Part shown: positions 35,953-62,572 of the stretch, in pieces
Layout: every line of letters begins with the position of its first letter
Numbering within the stretch: the first letter of the stretch is position 1
IMG/VR virus record: IMGVR_UViG_3300044641_007115
Span: 1-64,000 of that record
Length of the DNA: 64,000 nucleotides
Reading direction: 5' to 3' (one strand)
Translations under genes and position numbers: made by a program
The notes under the pieces: generated by a model
Seen by the model: only the letters and a program-made list of their open reading frames with translations
What the model was told of the DNA's origin: nothing
Database searches by the model: none

Positions 35953-36546
35953 ATGCAGAACACTCTAATCCCAATGGTCGTAGAACAGTCTCCGCGCGGT
36001 GAACGCTCCTACGACATCTATTCCCGTCTTCTCAAAGAGCACATCATTTTCCTTGGCACCGCCATCGACGACGACGTTGCCAATCTGGTCGTCGCACAGC
36101 TTCTTTTCCTTGCGGCGGAAGACCCGGACAAGGACATCAGCATGTACATCAATTCGCCGGGCGGATCGATCACGGCGGGCCTTGCTATTCTCGATACGAT
36201 GAATCTGGTCAAGCCCGACATCGTGACCTATTGCGTCGGTCAGGCCGCGTCGATGGGTGCTGTGTTGCTGGCGAACGGTGCCAAAGGGAAACGCTTTGCC
36301 TTGCCGCACGCACGCATCCTGATTCACCAGCCGTTGATGCGCGGACTCAGCGGACAGGCCAGCGACATCGACATTCACGCGAAAGAAATCTTGCGCATGC
36401 GCGAAATTCTCAACGGAATCTTAGCGACCAAGACCGGACAACCGCTCGAAAAGATCAGCGCGGACGTGGATCGCGACTACATCTTGGAAGCGGATGCCGC
36501 TGTCAAGTATGGCCTTGTGGACAAGGTGATCGAGAAACAGCCGTAA
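35953..36546 (+). CDS. clpP: ATP-dependent Clp protease proteolytic subunit
   Basis: [22 protein letters not shown] (Ser), IHQP (His), DRD (Asp): intact triad. Confidence 0.98.
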
Positions 36547-37997: not shown

Positions 37998-38099
37998 TGG
38001 CGGGGAGAATCGGATTTGAACCAATGATAACCATCACAAAACGGCTGTTGCCAGCAAAAGGCATGCAACGGTGCCTTAACCAAGCTAGGCTATCTCCCC
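37998..38099 (-). tRNA. 102-nt class II tRNA-like gene (G73, Ser-like) with an expanded anticodon arm; identity unresolved
   Basis: GGGGAGA/TCTCCCC acceptor, normal D and T arms, variable stem, CCA; no canonical 7-nt anticodon loop. Confidence 0.65.
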
Positions 38100-44797: not shown

Positions 44798-44863
44798 AGT
44801 TCTAGTATAGAAGTTTTGTACCTATATGTCAATAGGTCCCTGTGGAAAACTTCCAAGAGAAAC

Positions 44864-44890
44864 AAAAACGCCGGACCCGAAGGTCCGGCA
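44864..44890 (-). terminator. tmRNA terminator
   Basis: gccggacc-ttcg-ggtccggc gtttttgttt. Confidence 0.85.
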
Positions 44891-45190
44891 TTCTTGCGAA
44901 GGTCTTTCTTTAACAAGGCACCCTCAGTTCCCCGGATGGGTGCAATTAAGCAGCCATCGCCAGAACATTGCTGTTGGCAGTTATTGTTTTACGCTGTTAC
45001 CCGAATCCGCTCATAAAACTTCATCGGTTTCGGTAGTCGTCTACCGGTCCACTCCACTTTCCCAACTCACTGCCAATCGAATTCCGGGACGCCCCCGTAT
45101 GGTGCCCCCTTTCGAGAGCGTGTTTTGGTGGAGGCGGCGGGAGTCGAACCCGCGTCTTGCCAGCGTCAGAATCGGATCATCGCGGACAAC
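44890..45190 (-). ncRNA. ssrA: Circularly permuted two-piece tmRNA (acceptor piece ~45188-45126, 29-nt intervening segment, coding piece from 45096); tag ANSNVLAMAA at 44978-44946
   Basis: GCGGGTTCGACTCCCGC-CGCCTCC-ACCA precedes GGGGGCG; 7-bp acceptor with G3:U70; helix 2 pairs across pieces; ATAACT-GCC resume context. Confidence 0.92.
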
Positions 45191-45196
45191 TCTAAT

Positions 45197-45541
45197 TTAG
45201 CACACCACAGAATTTGATGCAAGCTGTTCTTCGTCGGACATGGCAGCAAATTTCTGCGGAGTTGGACCACCGAAGGGCGGCGTCAACATGGACTTCAGCA
45301 AGGCTTCGCGCACGTTCCGGCCCCGGAACATGTTGTTCGCACCTTGCCCCGGTTCCAGCCGGGCGACAGTGGTGCCGGTCGCATCGGTTTCGATAGACGG
45401 CCAATCACTGTCAATCCAATCGAGCATGTCATCGGCGGTGATGTTGCGCTCCGCATGTTTGACATATTTCGACGGATCGAACTGCCCGGCTGGAATCCAT
45501 ACTTTATGGTCGGGGCGGTCGATCAGACTGACTTCGTACAT
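45197..45541 (-). CDS. Hypothetical protein (start MYEVSLID)
   Basis: ATG overlaps upstream TGA; longer ORF call is shadowed by 45541..45909. Confidence 0.55.
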   Translation of the reverse strand: MYEVSLIDRPDHKVWIPAGQFDPSKYVKHAERNITADDMLDWIDSDWPSIETDATGTTVARLEPGQGANNMFRGRNVREALLKSMLTPPFGGPTPQKFAAMSDEEQLASNSVVC

Positions 45542-45909
45542 CAATCGACTTCCCACCCCGCTTCCACCATTTCCAGCGTAGAGGAATACGTCAACCGCTG
45601 AGTCGGAAGAGGAAAATCCGGCACGTCGCGGTTTGACTGCATGACAAACGTCACACTCATCCCGGTGTCTTCCTTCTTCTCCAGCTTCGCGTCGAAATGT
45701 TCGAAGAGGCTTCCCAAGTACACTGTGGGTTCCATCAGACCGTTCATCCCAACAACGAAGCCGCATTCCGGGAAACCGCCCGGTTGACGATTCGTCCGAC
45801 GAACGACAGGACAATATGACTTGCCGTTCTTGGATTTGTAGTGATACGACTTCACGTCGATCAGTAACCGAATCTCTTCATGCAAATCGACACCGGGCGA
45901 TGCTGTCAT
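45541..45909 (-). CDS. Hypothetical protein
   Basis: Packed operon, SD-like GAGGAA upstream. Confidence 0.55.
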   Translation of the reverse strand: MTASPGVDLHEEIRLLIDVKSYHYKSKNGKSYCPVVRRTNRQPGGFPECGFVVGMNGLMEPTVYLGSLFEHFDAKLEKKEDTGMSVTFVMQSNRDVPDFPLPTQRLTYSSTLEMVEAGWEVD

Positions 45910-60039: not shown

Positions 60040-60261
60040 TCAAACACTTTTTTCGATTTCTTCGAAGACCGAATCGGGGACCTTTTCAAAAAAGACGACG
60101 CCGGGTCCGCAATTGTGTTGAATCACAATCATCCCGGCGTCTTCGAGCAATTTCCGCACATCGTCTGGTCCATGAATGAACCGTGGATCAATGTTCGGTG
60201 TTCTGTCCGTTCGCTTCTTCCGCGTCAATTGTTGGCAGATTTTCCATAGGATTTCCCGCAT
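60040..60261 (-). CDS. Possible small hypothetical protein
   Basis: Overlaps the RNA ligase 3' end. Confidence 0.3.
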   Translation of the reverse strand: MREILWKICQQLTRKKRTDRTPNIDPRFIHGPDDVRKLLEDAGMIVIQHNCGPGVVFFEKVPDSVFEEIEKSV

Positions 60262-61366
60262 GTGGCATGATAACACGATTTTTTCGAGCACCAAGCAATC
60301 TTTCAAGAACTTCCGTGGACGCCGCCAATACAGCCGACCGAATAGAAGACACACGACCGCTACGCAACTGGAACAGTGCCGCTGAATATCGAGTCTTCAG
60401 TGCTTCGATAGCGAAGTCCTTCTGAACAGGAATATGTCGAATCTTGTCATAGGCTTCTTCGAGTTCGATCACCAGACCATTCAACGCTTCGGCCATCTCA
60501 TCATATTGCTGTTGATATTCAGGGAAGTAGCTGAGCACTTCACTGGTTTCCCCGGCCCGGATCAAATCAATGATGCGACGCTGACCGAAACCGTCCTTGG
60601 CGTGATGTACCAGAACGTAGGCGGGAGACTTGATCTTCACCCGCCGGAAATTCTGATCGACAACTACAAAGCCTTCGCCCGATTCAGGAGTCAGCTTTTG
60701 CGCCGCCGCGATGACATCATCGATACTGGACAGCGAATACTCTTTGACCACCGGCGGCAATAACGGATGACCAAGATCATCGACTTCCGCTTCCTGCATG
60801 GTGACACGATTGCGCGCGCCCAAGAACACCAAATCCGGTTCCGGGTATTGACATACAACACGATTGAACGGGGAAATCAACTCGAACATGAATGTCCAAT
60901 CTGTGTCTAGTTCCTCAACATCATACCCACGATCTTTCCAGATCCGCCAGAACAGTTCAGAGAACGTGAACGGATGGACATCGACCAGACCACCCGCATT
61001 CGGGCTACCTTTGGTGCTGACATTCCATTGTCCTCCCCAATACCAGACGATCATGAGAGATCCATCGACCTTCTCTTGGACACGGGCGGACTTCCAATCA
61101 ATCGAATCGGCCCACGACTCTCCATGATTGGCGAAACGGAAAAACGGGGCGGCGACGGTGTTCCAGTTGTCGCCACCATTCAAAATCATCCCACGGGATT
61201 CCTTCACAATCGGATCATTCGGATTGGCTTCTAGTTGGTCATAACAGAAGTGCCAAAGCCCCGAATGCTCCGGGTGTTCCTTCGCTCGAATACCACGGTT
61301 CACCAAGGTTTCGACCGTCTCTTCTCCCGCCCGTAGTACACGCTGAAGTTCTAGCATGCCAACCAT
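60188..61366 (-). CDS. rnlA: RNA ligase 1 (T4 RnlA-like)
   Basis: ESRG.IL; PFFRF.N; QEKVDGSL (motif I); T..FE..SP.NR.V; EG.VV.D; R.KIK. Confidence 0.9.
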   Translation of the reverse strand: MVGMLELQRVLRAGEETVETLVNRGIRAKEHPEHSGLWHFCYDQLEANPNDPIVKESRGMILNGGDNWNTVAAPFFRFANHGESWADSIDWKSARVQEKVDGSLMIVWYWGGQWNVSTKGSPNAGGLVDVHPFTFSELFWRIWKDRGYDVEELDTDWTFMFELISPFNRVVCQYPEPDLVFLGARNRVTMQEAEVDDLGHPLLPPVVKEYSLSSIDDVIAAAQKLTPESGEGFVVVDQNFRRVKIKSPAYVLVHHAKDGFGQRRIIDLIRAGETSEVLSYFPEYQQQYDEMAEALNGLVIELEEAYDKIRHIPVQKDFAIEALKTRYSAALFQLRSGRVSSIRSAVLAASTEVLERLLGARKNRVIMPHAGNPMENLPTIDAEEANGQNTEH

Positions 61367-61846: not shown

Positions 61847-62572
61847 ATGAAGGATTCTCTAGGCGACCGGATGAAAGGGAAGTACGAAGACCCTTTCCGA
61901 AACGTACTTCCCCAACGGACCAATCTCATCATTCGCATCGACGGACGGGCATTTCACACGTTCACGAAACCGTTCAAACGTCCTTACGACGAAGAGATTC
62001 ATGAAGCTATGTCCTTTGCCACCCGGATGGTGTGCGAAGAGATCGGTGGATGCAAGTTCGCATACACCCAAAGCGACGAAGCCAGCTTTCTTGCCACCGA
62101 CTACGATACACACGAAACACAGATGTGGTTCGGCGGGAACAAGGCTAAGATCGAAACCATTGCGGCGTCGGCATTCACAGCGTTCTTCAACTACTCCATG
62201 ATGAAGATTTCCCCTACTCTCATCGCACAGTTTGATGCCCGCGCCTTCATCATTCCAACACAGCACGAAGTCGTCAACTACTTCATTTGGCGGCAACAGG
62301 ATGCCATCCGCAACAGCGTGTCGATGTTGGCCCGTCACCACTTCAGTGCCAAGCGGCTACACAAAGTCTCATCGAAAGATGCTATCGACCTCTTGCGTAA
62401 AGAGAAGAAAGTTCGGTGGGAAGAAGATACCCCTGCATGGTTCCGCCGGGGAACTGCCCTCTACAAAAAAGCACCGGGCCGTCACAAAGTCCCAAACTGG
62501 TATACTGACAAAAACATCCCGGAGTTCGTCGGGAATCAAAATTTCGTGCGGCAACATATGCCTATCGAATAA
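61847..62572 (+). CDS. thg1: tRNA(His) guanylyltransferase Thg1-like protein
   Basis: LGDRMK.YE; IRIDGRAFHTFT; YTQSDE.S; WFGG...K; FDARAF; YF.WRQ.DA.RNS. Confidence 0.95.
   Translation: MKDSLGDRMKGKYEDPFRNVLPQRTNLIIRIDGRAFHTFTKPFKRPYDEEIHEAMSFATRMVCEEIGGCKFAYTQSDEASFLATDYDTHETQMWFGGNKAKIETIAASAFTAFFNYSMMKISPTLIAQFDARAFIIPTQHEVVNYFIWRQQDAIRNSVSMLARHHFSAKRLHKVSSKDAIDLLRKEKKVRWEEDTPAWFRRGTALYKKAPGRHKVPNWYTDKNIPEFVGNQNFVRQHMPIE

What the first reader, a model, noticed from the sequence alone, without database searches (positions are those of the whole stretch)
44864..45200. Phage-encoded circularly permuted (two-piece) tmRNA with tag ANSNVLAMAA
Seen: on the - strand the tmRNA 3' end (T arm GCGGG-TTCGACT-CCCGC, then CGCCTCC-A-CCA ending at 45126) comes before the 5' end (GGGGGCG at 45096), separated by 29 nt. 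The 7-bp acceptor helix is perfect and carries the Ala identity pair G3:U70. Helix 2 pairs across the two pieces (TTGGCAGTG/CGCTGGCAA, GAGTTGG/CCGATTC, GTGGA/TCCGC). ATAACT-GCC is followed by ANSNVLAMAA-stop, then a terminator, and a CTAAAT motif lies just upstream of the gene. Established: permuted tmRNAs occur in Alphaproteobacteria, some cyanobacteria and some Betaproteobacteria. Inference: in a T4-like phage with an apparently acidobacterial host this may be an independent permutation or a distant acquisition.
Basis: partly seen in the sequence, partly recalled or inferred. Interest (0 to 1): 0.85.

Follow-up and report, generated by a model that had tools for sequence, protein, structure and literature searches.

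The report
Phage-borne two-piece tmRNA gene
A large T4-like phage, probably infecting soil Acidobacteria, carries a real and evolutionarily maintained circularly permuted (two-piece) tmRNA gene for rescuing stalled ribosomes; such phage genes are already known, so this is a new member of a known kind.

Summary
ARAGORN calls a permuted tmRNA at 44855-45219 (-) with tag ANSNVLAMAA. Rfam's tmRNA_permuted model scores 98.1 bits (threshold 47, E 8e-18).

The window is 100% identical to part of a 224-kb IMG/VR contig of a distant T4-like phage. Diverged relatives carry the gene with tags ANSNVLAMAA, ADSNVMAMAA and AKNTLAMAAAA, and with a conserved promoter. Across four variants, 21 of 78 predicted pairs show compensatory double changes (controls 1-3 and 7). 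The RNA is therefore under selection in the phage.

The best clade-specific model is beta_tmRNA (76 bits, just under its threshold of 84). The mRNA-domain signature occurs in cells almost only in Dechloromonas/Azonexus two-piece tmRNAs. An independent permutation is therefore unlikely. The phage RNA nevertheless lies far outside that tight cellular clade.

A phage ClpP 77-84% identical to Bryobacteraceae/Paludibaculum ClpP supports an acidobacterial host, a phylum with one-piece tmRNA.

Two-piece tmRNAs in phages are already published (Melnitz; 53 unique cases), and I found dozens more in IMG/VR. Verdict: real and functional-looking, but not a new kind.

The parts
45194..45222 (-). Putative sigma-70-type promoter: -35-like TTGCAT (45222-45217), 17-nt spacer, extended -10 TGTGC-TAAATT (hexamer 45199-45194). 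It overlaps the stop codon of the upstream ORF.
   Evidence: TTGC(A/G)T-17-TAAATT is conserved in all four lineage variants. This includes L118, where the upstream sequence is otherwise not homologous. The Rfam beta_tmRNA model aligns its own promoter segment here. It fails the strict consensus scan (3/6 in the -35), so it is putative.
45126..45190 (-). Acceptor piece (about 65 nt): 5' strands of helix 2, T arm (45153-45137), 3' strand of the acceptor stem (45136-45130), discriminator A and encoded CCA (ends at 45126). The 5' end is inferred from the promoter.
   Evidence: Compensatory changes occur in the T stem, acceptor stem and helix 2 across variants.
45097..45125 (-). 29-nt intervening segment, removed on maturation (inferred). 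It contains a small hairpin closed by a GNRA tetraloop (GAAA here, GCAA in L016).
   Evidence: Sequence; fold of the segment in the window and L016; pairs 77-79/85-87.
44862..45096 (-). Coding piece: 5' acceptor strand GGGGGCG (45096-45090), GGAAUUCGA D-loop-like segment, 3' strands of helix 2, conserved hairpins, tag reading frame, post-tag hairpins with the GCCUUGUUA loop motif, and terminator.
44946..44978 (-). Tag reading frame: resume codon GCC (44978-44976), ANSNVLAMAA, stop TAA (44948-44946).
   Evidence: ARAGORN. The same tag is in L016/L017/L018. Variants are ADSNVMAMAA (L123) and AKNTLAMAAAA (L118).
44862..44897 (-). Intrinsic terminator (GCCGGACC-TTCG-GGTCCGGC core followed by a T run).
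   Evidence: 16-pair stem, 8 G-C; the alignment to the terminal hairpin of beta_tmRNA.
35953..36546 (+). Phage-encoded ClpP (197 aa), about 8.3 kb away. It is not part of the RNA gene, but it is the protease core that degrades ssrA-tagged proteins. It is a possible functional partner and the basis of the host inference.
   Evidence: PF00574, E 3.5e-81. It is 77-84% identical to acidobacterial ClpP.

Best explanation
This is a genuine ssrA gene in circularly permuted form, carried by a roughly 185-224-kb T4-like phage.

Shown:
- The gene has every sequence and structure hallmark of a two-piece tmRNA.
- It sits in phage DNA in at least five IMG/VR contigs and several Logan contigs; a short ENA contig (L121) carries the neighbouring gene only.
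- Its helices are maintained by compensatory substitutions, while the tag keeps a C-terminal (L/M)AMAA(AA).

Inferred mechanism:
- Host RNA polymerase transcribes it from a conserved extended -10 promoter as one precursor.
- RNase P cuts at G45096, and 3' trimming exposes the encoded CCA at 45126, which removes the 29-nt loop.
- The ~65-nt acceptor piece and ~235-nt coding piece stay base-paired through the acceptor stem and helix 2.
- Host AlaRS charges the RNA through G3:U70, and host SmpB and EF-Tu deliver it to ribosomes stalled on broken mRNAs.
- Translation resumes at GCC and appends ANSNVLAMAA. This frees the ribosome and marks the peptide for ClpXP-type proteolysis, for which the phage supplies its own ClpP core.
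- The likely benefit is keeping ribosomes and amino acids available while the host's RNA and its own ssrA supply decay during infection.

Evolution: the RNA shares ancestry with the 'beta-type' two-piece tmRNA rather than being a new permutation. It is not a recent capture from sampled Rhodocyclales. It is foreign in form to the probable acidobacterial host, whose phylum uses one-piece tmRNA.
For: Identity: ARAGORN tmRNA*. RF04321 scores 98.1 bits against GA 47, E 7.7e-18, over the full model.

Phage context: the window is 100% identical over 12.2 kb to IMGVR_UViG_3300044641_007115 (224,490 bp) and 99.99% identical to a 184,632-bp contig from another sample. T4-like genes are present.

Conservation: relatives carry a syntenic tmRNA with the same tag. 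More distant relatives have ADSNVMAMAA and AKNTLAMAAAA.

Selection on structure: 21 of 78 RNAalifold pairs carry double compensatory changes and 96% of cells are paired. Slid partners give 1-3 such pairs, and 100 column-shuffled refolds give a mean of 7 and a maximum of 13. In the tRNA-like domain, 13 of 32 pairs are compensatory.

Promoter conserved in a changed context. Terminator.

Beta-type affinity: RF01850 is the best model of the clan, at 76.1 bits over 1-331 (81.0 in L016). The mRNA-domain signature hits 51 genome loci, 49 from Dechloromonas, Azonexus, Propionivibrio, Ferribacterium or other Betaproteobacteria and two in MAGs labelled Bacteroidota. ARAGORN calls a permuted tmRNA in 44 of them, 43 with the 10-residue tags ANDEQFAIAA or ANDEHFAIAA.

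Host: ClpP hits. Acidobacteriota have 1589 standard against 5 'beta-permuted' tmRNA genes.

Precedent: two-piece tmRNA in phage Melnitz and 53 unique phage cases (PMC9004378). Caulobacter phage CcrPW has a tmRNA*.
Against: - No expression, processing, charging or tagging data exist. All functional steps are inferred from the Caulobacter and E. coli paradigms.
- The promoter fails a strict sigma-70 consensus scan.
- RF01850 is below its gathering score (76.1 against 84).
- The tree places the phage RNA on a saturated branch (stem 2.8 changes per site) outside the cellular clade, so the donor is unresolved.
- No alpha or cyano cellular sequences were in the tree.
- The host assignment rests on one gene (ClpP).
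- The host's own ssrA tag could not be retrieved, so compatibility of the AMAA tag with host proteolysis is untested.
- No SmpB was seen in the window, but only a weak motif test was possible.
- The tmRNA is not more conserved overall than its neighbouring gene: 86% nt identity against 91% aa identity for the neighbour's C-terminal 56%.
Confidence: 0.78

Rival explanations
1. The RNA is a decoy. It mimics tmRNA to titrate host SmpB, AlaRS or EF-Tu and so shuts down host trans-translation, rather than tagging proteins productively.
For: A TLD-only tmRNA-like gene exists in mycobacteriophage DS6A, and a similar molecule strongly inhibits tmRNA, perhaps by titrating SmpB (PMC4131195; PMC11915505). 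The phage RNA differs in form from the host phylum's one-piece tmRNA.
Against: A decoy needs only the tRNA-like domain. Here the resume context, the full tag frame, the stop codon and the downstream hairpins are retained. The tag frame is identical at the nucleotide level between the window and L016. The C-terminal AMAA is kept in diverged variants.
Confidence: 0.08
2. The phage tmRNA works as a tmRNA, but its unusual uncharged tag (no Asp or Glu, AMAA end) reroutes tagged proteins. They would escape host adaptors, or go preferentially to a phage-modified Clp protease built on the phage ClpP. In this reading the module reprograms proteolysis rather than simply backing up the host system.
For: The tag lacks the acidic ANDE segment seen in the related cellular tags ANDEQFAIAA and ANDEHFAIAA. 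A full-length ClpP is encoded 8.3 kb away and is also present in relatives. The exact tag is absent from 185,579 species-representative genomes.
Against: The C-terminal Ala-Ala, which from general knowledge of ClpX recognition is the critical determinant, is retained. The phage ClpP is about 80% identical to host-type ClpP, which suggests ordinary function. No ClpX or adaptor is seen in the window. The host tag is unknown, so 'unusual' may simply mean host-like.
Confidence: 0.1
3. The permuted arrangement arose independently in this phage lineage from a one-piece tmRNA, for example one captured from the acidobacterial host.
For: The host phylum has one-piece tmRNA. The phage RNA is very divergent from all cellular permuted tmRNAs sampled. 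RF01850 is below threshold.
Against: The full-length alignment to the beta model covers promoter position, order of segments, length of the intervening loop, the 10-residue AN...A.AA tag and the CCGGGG...GCCUUGUUA post-tag hairpin. That signature is nearly exclusive to Rhodocyclales two-piece genes among 185,579 genomes. Many other phage contigs carry related permuted genes.
Confidence: 0.03
4. The gene is a passenger or an artefact: a host ssrA fragment kept as an attachment site, or a host-phage assembly chimera with no function in the phage.
For: tmRNA genes are frequent integration sites, and phages often carry ssrA fragments (PMC9004378; PMC4131195).
Against: The gene is complete (both pieces, promoter, terminator). 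It lies deep inside a 224-kb contig between phage genes. It recurs in independent assemblies from different samples. It shows compensatory evolution. No cellular genome has this tag.
Confidence: 0.01

Closest known systems
Betaproteobacterial two-piece tmRNA (Rfam RF01850; Dechloromonas/Azonexus/Propionivibrio type, tags ANDEQFAIAA/ANDEHFAIAA)
   Same: Same gene order: promoter, acceptor piece, short intervening loop, coding piece, terminal hairpin. Also shared are the 10-residue tag beginning AN and ending A-x-AA, the AUAAnUGCC resume context, and the CCGGGG...GCCUUGUUA post-tag hairpin. It is the best-scoring clade-specific model.
   Different: The score is 76.1 bits, below the family threshold of 84. 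Extra hairpins lie between helix 2 and the tag. The tag has no acidic residues. The gene sits in a phage, not a chromosome. The RNA lies outside the tight cellular clade on a very long branch. The probable host is not a betaproteobacterium.
Two-piece tmRNA of the T4-like marine phage Melnitz and of other phages (Buchholz et al. 2022, PMC9004378)
   Same: A complete permuted ssrA in a T4-like myophage, expressed from an early-type promoter. It was proposed to maintain translation or recycle amino acids. Its form or lineage does not match the host's own ssrA.
   Different: Melnitz's gene is reported as alphaproteobacterial-like and under a glutamine riboswitch, in a marine host. This one is beta-like, has no riboswitch hit, has a probable acidobacterial host, and shows no nucleotide similarity to cultured phage records beyond the T arm.
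Caulobacter phage CcrPW / phiCbK-like phages
   Same: Cultured large phages with a permuted tmRNA lying among tRNA genes (ARAGORN tmRNA* in CcrPW).
   Different: Their host itself has two-piece tmRNA. The tag is unrelated (VNDNDAPVMEQRLAA). Only the T arm and acceptor end are similar.
Caulobacter crescentus two-piece tmRNA (Keiler, Shapiro and Williams 2000, as cited in PMC9004378 and PMC11915505)
   Same: It is the functional paradigm. [quoted passage not shown]
   Different: It is alpha-type, chromosomal and experimentally proven. Here processing and activity are inferred only.
One-piece phage tmRNAs (mycobacteriophage Bxz1 cluster; Bacillus phage G, which also encodes ClpP and ClpX)
   Same: A phage-encoded ssrA accompanies many tRNAs. 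Phage G shows that tmRNA and Clp protease genes can co-occur in one phage genome (PMC4131195; PMC12484599).
   Different: Those are the standard, unpermuted form. No ClpX was found in this window.

Membership tests
tmRNA, circularly permuted (two-piece) form (Rfam RF04321) | Covariance-model score at or above the curated gathering score over the full model | tested here: met
   98.1 bits against 47, model positions 1-213/213, E 7.7e-18. Relatives score 108.6 bits.
tmRNA, circularly permuted (two-piece) form (Rfam RF04321) | tRNA-Ala-like domain: 7-bp acceptor stem with G3:U70, discriminator A, CCA, 5-bp T stem with a canonical 7-nt T loop | tested here: met
   Read directly. The pairs are kept with compensatory changes in four variants, and G3:U70 is invariant.
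tmRNA, circularly permuted (two-piece) form (Rfam RF04321) | Permuted gene order: the 3' acceptor/T-arm segment lies upstream of the 5' acceptor strand, joined by a short removable loop | tested here: met
   CCA ends at 45126 and GGGGGCG starts at 45096, with a 29-nt loop between. ARAGORN flags tmRNA*.
tmRNA, circularly permuted (two-piece) form (Rfam RF04321) | Tag reading frame with an Ala resume codon, a hydrophobic-Ala-Ala end and a stop codon | tested here: met
   ANSNVLAMAA followed by TAA. The frame is conserved or conservatively varied in relatives.
tmRNA, circularly permuted (two-piece) form (Rfam RF04321) | Precursor processed in vivo into two base-paired RNAs | not testable with these tools
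   No transcript data. Only the RNase P-type site and the encoded CCA are visible.
tmRNA, circularly permuted (two-piece) form (Rfam RF04321) | Alanylation, SmpB binding and trans-translation activity | not testable with these tools
   Requires biochemistry or proteomics.
beta_tmRNA (Rfam RF01850) | Score at or above the gathering score of 84 bits | tested here: not met
   76.1 bits for the window and 81.0 bits for L016-L018. Both are full-length and the best of clan CL00001, but below threshold. The RNA is therefore filed as beta-like, not as a member.
beta_tmRNA (Rfam RF01850) | Shared mRNA-domain signature (resume context, 10-residue tag, GCCYUGUUA hairpin at fixed spacing) | tested here: met
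   The pattern matches the window. Among 185,579 genomes it matches 51 loci, 49 from Rhodocyclales or other Betaproteobacteria; ARAGORN calls a permuted tmRNA in 44 of the 51.
beta_tmRNA (Rfam RF01850) | Phylogenetic placement within the cellular betaproteobacterial clade | tested here: not met
   The cellular sequences form one tight clade (SH-aLRT 99). All 24 viral sequences, including the window, lie outside it on long branches.
alpha_tmRNA / cyano_tmRNA (RF01849 / RF01851) | Score at the gathering threshold, or best of clan | tested here: not met
   No hit at the gathering threshold. In the E-value run both were out-scored by RF01850 and suppressed as lower-scoring clan members.
T4-like myophage | Hallmark replication and virion genes (gp32, tail tube gp19, baseplate/tail proteins, RNA ligase) | tested here: met
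   PF08804 gp32, E 1.9e-43, and a weak PF06841 gp19 hit. phrog_350 tail protein and phrog_562 RNA ligase. The best cultured relatives are pelagi-, cyano- and Caulobacter T4-like phages at about 25% identity. Capsid and terminase lie outside the part examined.

The most novel reading that the evidence does not exclude
Beta-like permuted tmRNAs may be primarily a phage-borne family. They are deeply diverse in T4-like and huge phages of many hosts, including this probable Acidobacteria phage. The cellular 'third lineage' in Rhodocyclales is tight and homogeneous. That contrast would fit an origin of the betaproteobacterial two-piece ssrA by replacement from a phage gene rather than by an independent permutation in bacteria. 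In this phage the RNA, together with a host-derived ClpP, would form a self-contained tag-and-degrade module operating in a phylum that otherwise uses one-piece tmRNA.
Probability: 0.1. Interest if true: 0.75.

Novelty: new member of a known kind. Interest (0 to 1): 0.36.

Why it matters
The finding extends phage-encoded two-piece tmRNAs from marine and aquatic phages of Proteobacteria and cyanobacteria to a soil-type T4-like phage lineage whose probable hosts are Acidobacteria. Few phages of that phylum are characterised, and its own tmRNA is one-piece.

The phage carries tmRNA, ClpP, at least ten tRNAs, a Thg1-like enzyme and an RNA ligase. Together these outline a phage toolkit for keeping translation and protein turnover running during infection.

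The wider pattern seen along the way is that diverse beta-like permuted tmRNAs occur in phages, while the cellular clade is narrow. This makes the old question of how many times tmRNA was permuted testable with existing databases.

Tried and rejected
1. Exact-tag search (degenerate codons) in 185,579 species genomes and in JGI metagenome contigs gave 0 hits in each. No cellular donor or host with this tag was found.
2. A lineage-specific motif scan found only the five known IMG/VR contigs and nothing in the metagenome contigs.
3. blastn of the tmRNA against cultured phages matched only the 30-40-nt T-arm/acceptor segment. The same held for the L001-type phage tmRNA.
4. The tree of 67 permuted tmRNAs has saturated phage branches and does not resolve a donor. 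It shows only that the window is not nested in Rhodocyclales.
5. The MFE fold of the whole precursor does not give the native fold. Cofolding of the two pieces and RNAalifold were used instead.
6. An SmpB motif scan of the window and all loci found nothing. The motifs came from memory, so this is a weak negative.
7. ESM Atlas look-ups of the Thg1-like protein and the amidase returned viral clusters only and gave no host signal.
8. The flanking proteins have no Pfam domains. The 205-aa upstream ORF is probably a ~114-aa gene.
10. The Sharkady and Williams 2004 paper is not held in the library.
11. I did not type the 369-character structure into the count of structure pairs. The equivalent counts and controls were computed.

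Full report
**Observation**

- T arm: GCGGG / TTCGACT / CCCGC (45153-45137).
- Acceptor 3' strand CGCCTCC, discriminator A and CCA ending at 45126.
- A 29-nt intervening segment (45125-45097).
- The acceptor 5' strand GGGGGCG starting at 45096. The resulting 7-bp stem is perfect and has G3:U70.
- Further 3' lie the resume codon GCC (44978), the frame ANSNVLAMAA, TAA (44948-44946) and a strong intrinsic terminator (44897-44862).

ARAGORN calls a permuted tmRNA (tmRNA*) at 44855-45219 with that tag. Rfam's tmRNA_permuted model RF04321 matches over its full length at 98.1 bits (gathering score 47, E 7.7e-18 for the whole window).

**Context**

The window is 100% identical over 12.2 kb to IMGVR_UViG_3300044641_007115 (224,490 bp). 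It is 99.99% identical to a 184,632-bp contig from another sample.

It encodes the following:
- gp32, a gp19-like tail tube protein, tail and baseplate proteins, and a tape-measure-like protein with peptidase and lysozyme domains;
- RNA ligase, dNMP kinase, PhoH, a DNA methylase and a Thg1-like enzyme;
- ten tRNA genes called by ARAGORN, plus one tRNA-like gene seen only by Rfam.

Its tail protein finds only ~25%-identical relatives among cultured phages: pelagimyophages, cyanomyophages, Caulobacter phage Cr30 and Melnitz. It is therefore a distant T4-like myophage. G+C is about 52%.

**Is the gene maintained in the phage?**

- The upstream gene is probably ~114 aa; the longer ORF has no support.
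- Using it as a handle, I found diverged relatives in IMG/VR (L016-L018; the 205-aa ORF is 71-73% identical). They have a syntenic permuted tmRNA and the same tag.
- Logan assemblies gave two further variants. L123 has tag ADSNVMAMAA. L118 has tag AKNTLAMAAAA, and there a NAMPT gene and a small ORF have been inserted between the handle gene and the tmRNA.
- All four variants keep TTGC(A/G)T, 17 nt, then TAAATT preceded by TGTGC. In L118 the sequence further upstream is otherwise unrelated. This is a conserved extended -10 promoter, although it fails a strict consensus scan.
- RNAalifold on the four variants recovers the tmRNA architecture: acceptor stem, T arm and three segments of helix 2 joining the two pieces.
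- 21 of 78 pairs carry compensatory double changes and 96% of cells are paired.
- With 3' partners slid by 1-3 columns, only 1-3 pairs qualify. In 100 column-shuffled, refolded alignments the mean is 7 and the maximum 13.
- In the tRNA-like domain, 13 of 32 pairs are compensatory.
- Examples: T stem GCGGG/CCCGC, GCCGG/CCGGC and CAGGG/CCCUG; acceptor GGGGGCG, GGGGGUG and GGGGAUG, each with a matching partner strand.

The RNA structure is therefore under purifying selection in the phage lineage. The tag varies at its N-terminal half but keeps (L/M)AMAA or AMAAAA.

**Which kind of permuted tmRNA?**

- With relaxed thresholds, the best model in clan CL00001 is beta_tmRNA (RF01850). It scores 76.1 bits over model positions 1-331 (81.0 bits in L016-L018), just under its gathering score of 84.
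- The alignment spans the promoter position, both pieces, the tag (consensus ANDEHFAMAA against ANSNVLAMAA) and the post-tag hairpin with a GCCUUGUUA loop.
- A pattern encoding this mRNA-domain signature matched 51 loci among 185,579 species genomes. Forty-nine are from Dechloromonas, Azonexus, Ferribacterium, Propionivibrio or other Betaproteobacteria, and two sit in MAGs labelled Bacteroidota.
- ARAGORN calls a permuted tmRNA in 44 of the 51 loci, 43 with tags ANDEQFAIAA or ANDEHFAIAA; most of the rest are cut by a contig end.
- This argues against an independent permutation event.
- In a maximum-likelihood tree of 67 permuted tmRNAs, the 43 cellular sequences form one tight clade. All 24 viral sequences lie outside it on long branches. 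The window plus L016 pair sits on a saturated stem of 2.8 changes per site.
- There is no sign of a recent capture from the sampled Rhodocyclales, and the direction of transfer is open.
- The exact tag occurs in no species-representative genome and in no JGI metagenome contig searched.

**Host**

A full-length ClpP is encoded at 35953-36546 (PF00574, E 3.5e-81). After a handful of phage relatives (87-99% identical), its closest homologues are 77-84% identical. Every organism-named hit among the best 120 is from Acidobacteriota: Bryobacteraceae, Bryobacter, Paludibaculum fermentans. One 84%-identical homologue sits in an ordinary cellular neighbourhood in an NCBI MAG. The best ClpP in cultured phage records is only ~62% identical.

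In the 2025 tmRNA database, Acidobacteriota have 1589 standard tmRNA genes and only 5 'beta-permuted' ones (PMC11915505, Supplementary Table 2). Those five may be phage contigs binned with MAGs. That is conjecture.

**How it most likely works**

Shown:
- the anatomy;
- conservation and covariation;
- the phage location.

Inferred from the Caulobacter and E. coli paradigms (as described in PMC9004378 and PMC11915505):
- transcription as one precursor;
- RNase P cleavage 5' of G45096;
- 3' trimming to the encoded CCA at 45126;
- two RNAs of ~65 and ~235 nt held together by the acceptor stem and helix 2;
- alanylation through G3:U70;
- delivery by host SmpB and EF-Tu;
- resumption of translation at GCC;
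- addition of ANSNVLAMAA;
- proteolysis by ClpXP-type machines, for which the phage provides a ClpP core.

A decoy role is less likely because the complete tag frame is conserved. An altered-specificity tag cannot be excluded, because the host tag is unknown.

**Comparison with what is known**

- Phage tmRNAs are long known: the Bxz1 cluster, phage G and DS6A (PMC4131195).
- Two-piece forms in phages are explicitly reported. Melnitz carries one, and 53 unique two-piece tmRNAs were counted among 18,146 phage genomes, nearly all from marine or aquatic sources (PMC9004378).
- I confirmed an unannotated permuted tmRNA in cultured Caulobacter phage CcrPW.
- I found dozens of IMG/VR contigs with permuted tmRNAs, several above the beta_tmRNA threshold.
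- Phage G shows tmRNA co-occurring with ClpP and ClpX (PMC12484599).
- A full-text search found no report of a tmRNA in an Acidobacteria phage.

The finding is therefore a new member of a known kind. Its particular interest is a beta-like two-piece gene in a phage of a phylum with one-piece tmRNA, accompanied by a host-derived ClpP.

**Limits**

- There are no transcript or protein data.
- The donor is unresolved.
- The host is inferred from one gene.
- The host ssrA was not retrieved.
- Only 64 kb of a ~224-kb genome was examined, so smpB or clpX elsewhere cannot be excluded.

Noticed in passing
window 35953-36546 (+): Full-length ClpP (PF00574, E 3.5e-81), 77-84% identical to Bryobacteraceae/Paludibaculum ClpP. 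It lies between tRNA-Met and the tRNA cluster, 8.3 kb from the tmRNA. It is a possible tag-and-degrade partner and the best clue to the host. No ClpX is adjacent.
   Followed up: partly
window 61847-62572 (+) and 60188-61366 (-): A Thg1-like tRNA(His) guanylyltransferase-family protein lies next to a T4 RnlA-like RNA ligase. Together with the tRNAs and the tmRNA, they suggest a tRNA repair and translation-maintenance gene set.
   Followed up: partly
window 38001-38099 (-): A 97-99-nt tRNA-like gene, seen by Rfam (42.7 bits) but not by default ARAGORN. With intron search on, ARAGORN gives a doubtful tRNA-Lys(ttt) with a 5-nt 'intron' and a long extra arm. Its identity is unclear.
   Followed up: partly
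window 44804-44832 (-): A near-consensus sigma-70 promoter (TTGACA-17-TATACT, 11/12) lies immediately downstream of the tmRNA terminator. It would drive a small ORF starting at about 44796.
   Followed up: no
L073-L076, L078, L100, L110, L114 (IMG/VR): A family of low-GC viral contigs carries permuted tmRNA-like genes that ARAGORN misses. The T loop is non-canonical (CCGGG-GGCGGTA-CCCGG). In several of them a TATAAATA (T4 late-type) motif lies upstream. The tags are of the ANANIALAA type. In some contigs the intervening segments are 100-150 nt long.
   Followed up: partly
L082 579-877 and 6532-6902: One 8.5-kb viral contig carries two different permuted tmRNA genes (tags ANDEVYDLAIAA and ANDDIYSLAA). 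Both are confirmed by RF04321 (94 and 116 bits).
   Followed up: no
L005 (332-kb contig) and L010 (463-kb contig), IMG sample 3300033405: Huge-phage contigs carry permuted tmRNAs with tags ANAPKAMAAHA and ATAPKALAMAAAA, an AMAA-rich end like the window lineage. L005 also has two tRNAs with a CTA anticodon (amber suppressors) nearby, which hints at stop-codon recoding.
   Followed up: no
L118 6568-7983: In the most diverged relative, a NAMPT (nicotinamide phosphoribosyltransferase) gene and a 106-aa ORF are inserted between the conserved upstream gene and the tmRNA. The tmRNA keeps its own promoter.
   Followed up: partly
L124 645-1060 (Caulobacter phage CcrPW, MH588545.1 about 140723-141138): ARAGORN finds a permuted tmRNA (tag VNDNDAPVMEQRLAA) between tRNA-Cys and tRNA-Met. 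It is not annotated in the GenBank record.
   Followed up: partly
L117 5890-6288: In a cellular contig carrying the closest cellular ClpP, a 132-aa RF-1-domain protein (ArfB-like alternative ribosome rescue factor) lies about 4 kb upstream of clpP.
   Followed up: no
window 45197-45814 (-): The mechanical 205-aa ORF upstream of the tmRNA is probably a ~114-aa gene, because database homologues cover only its C-terminal 56%. Its stop codon lies inside the tmRNA -10 element.
   Followed up: partly
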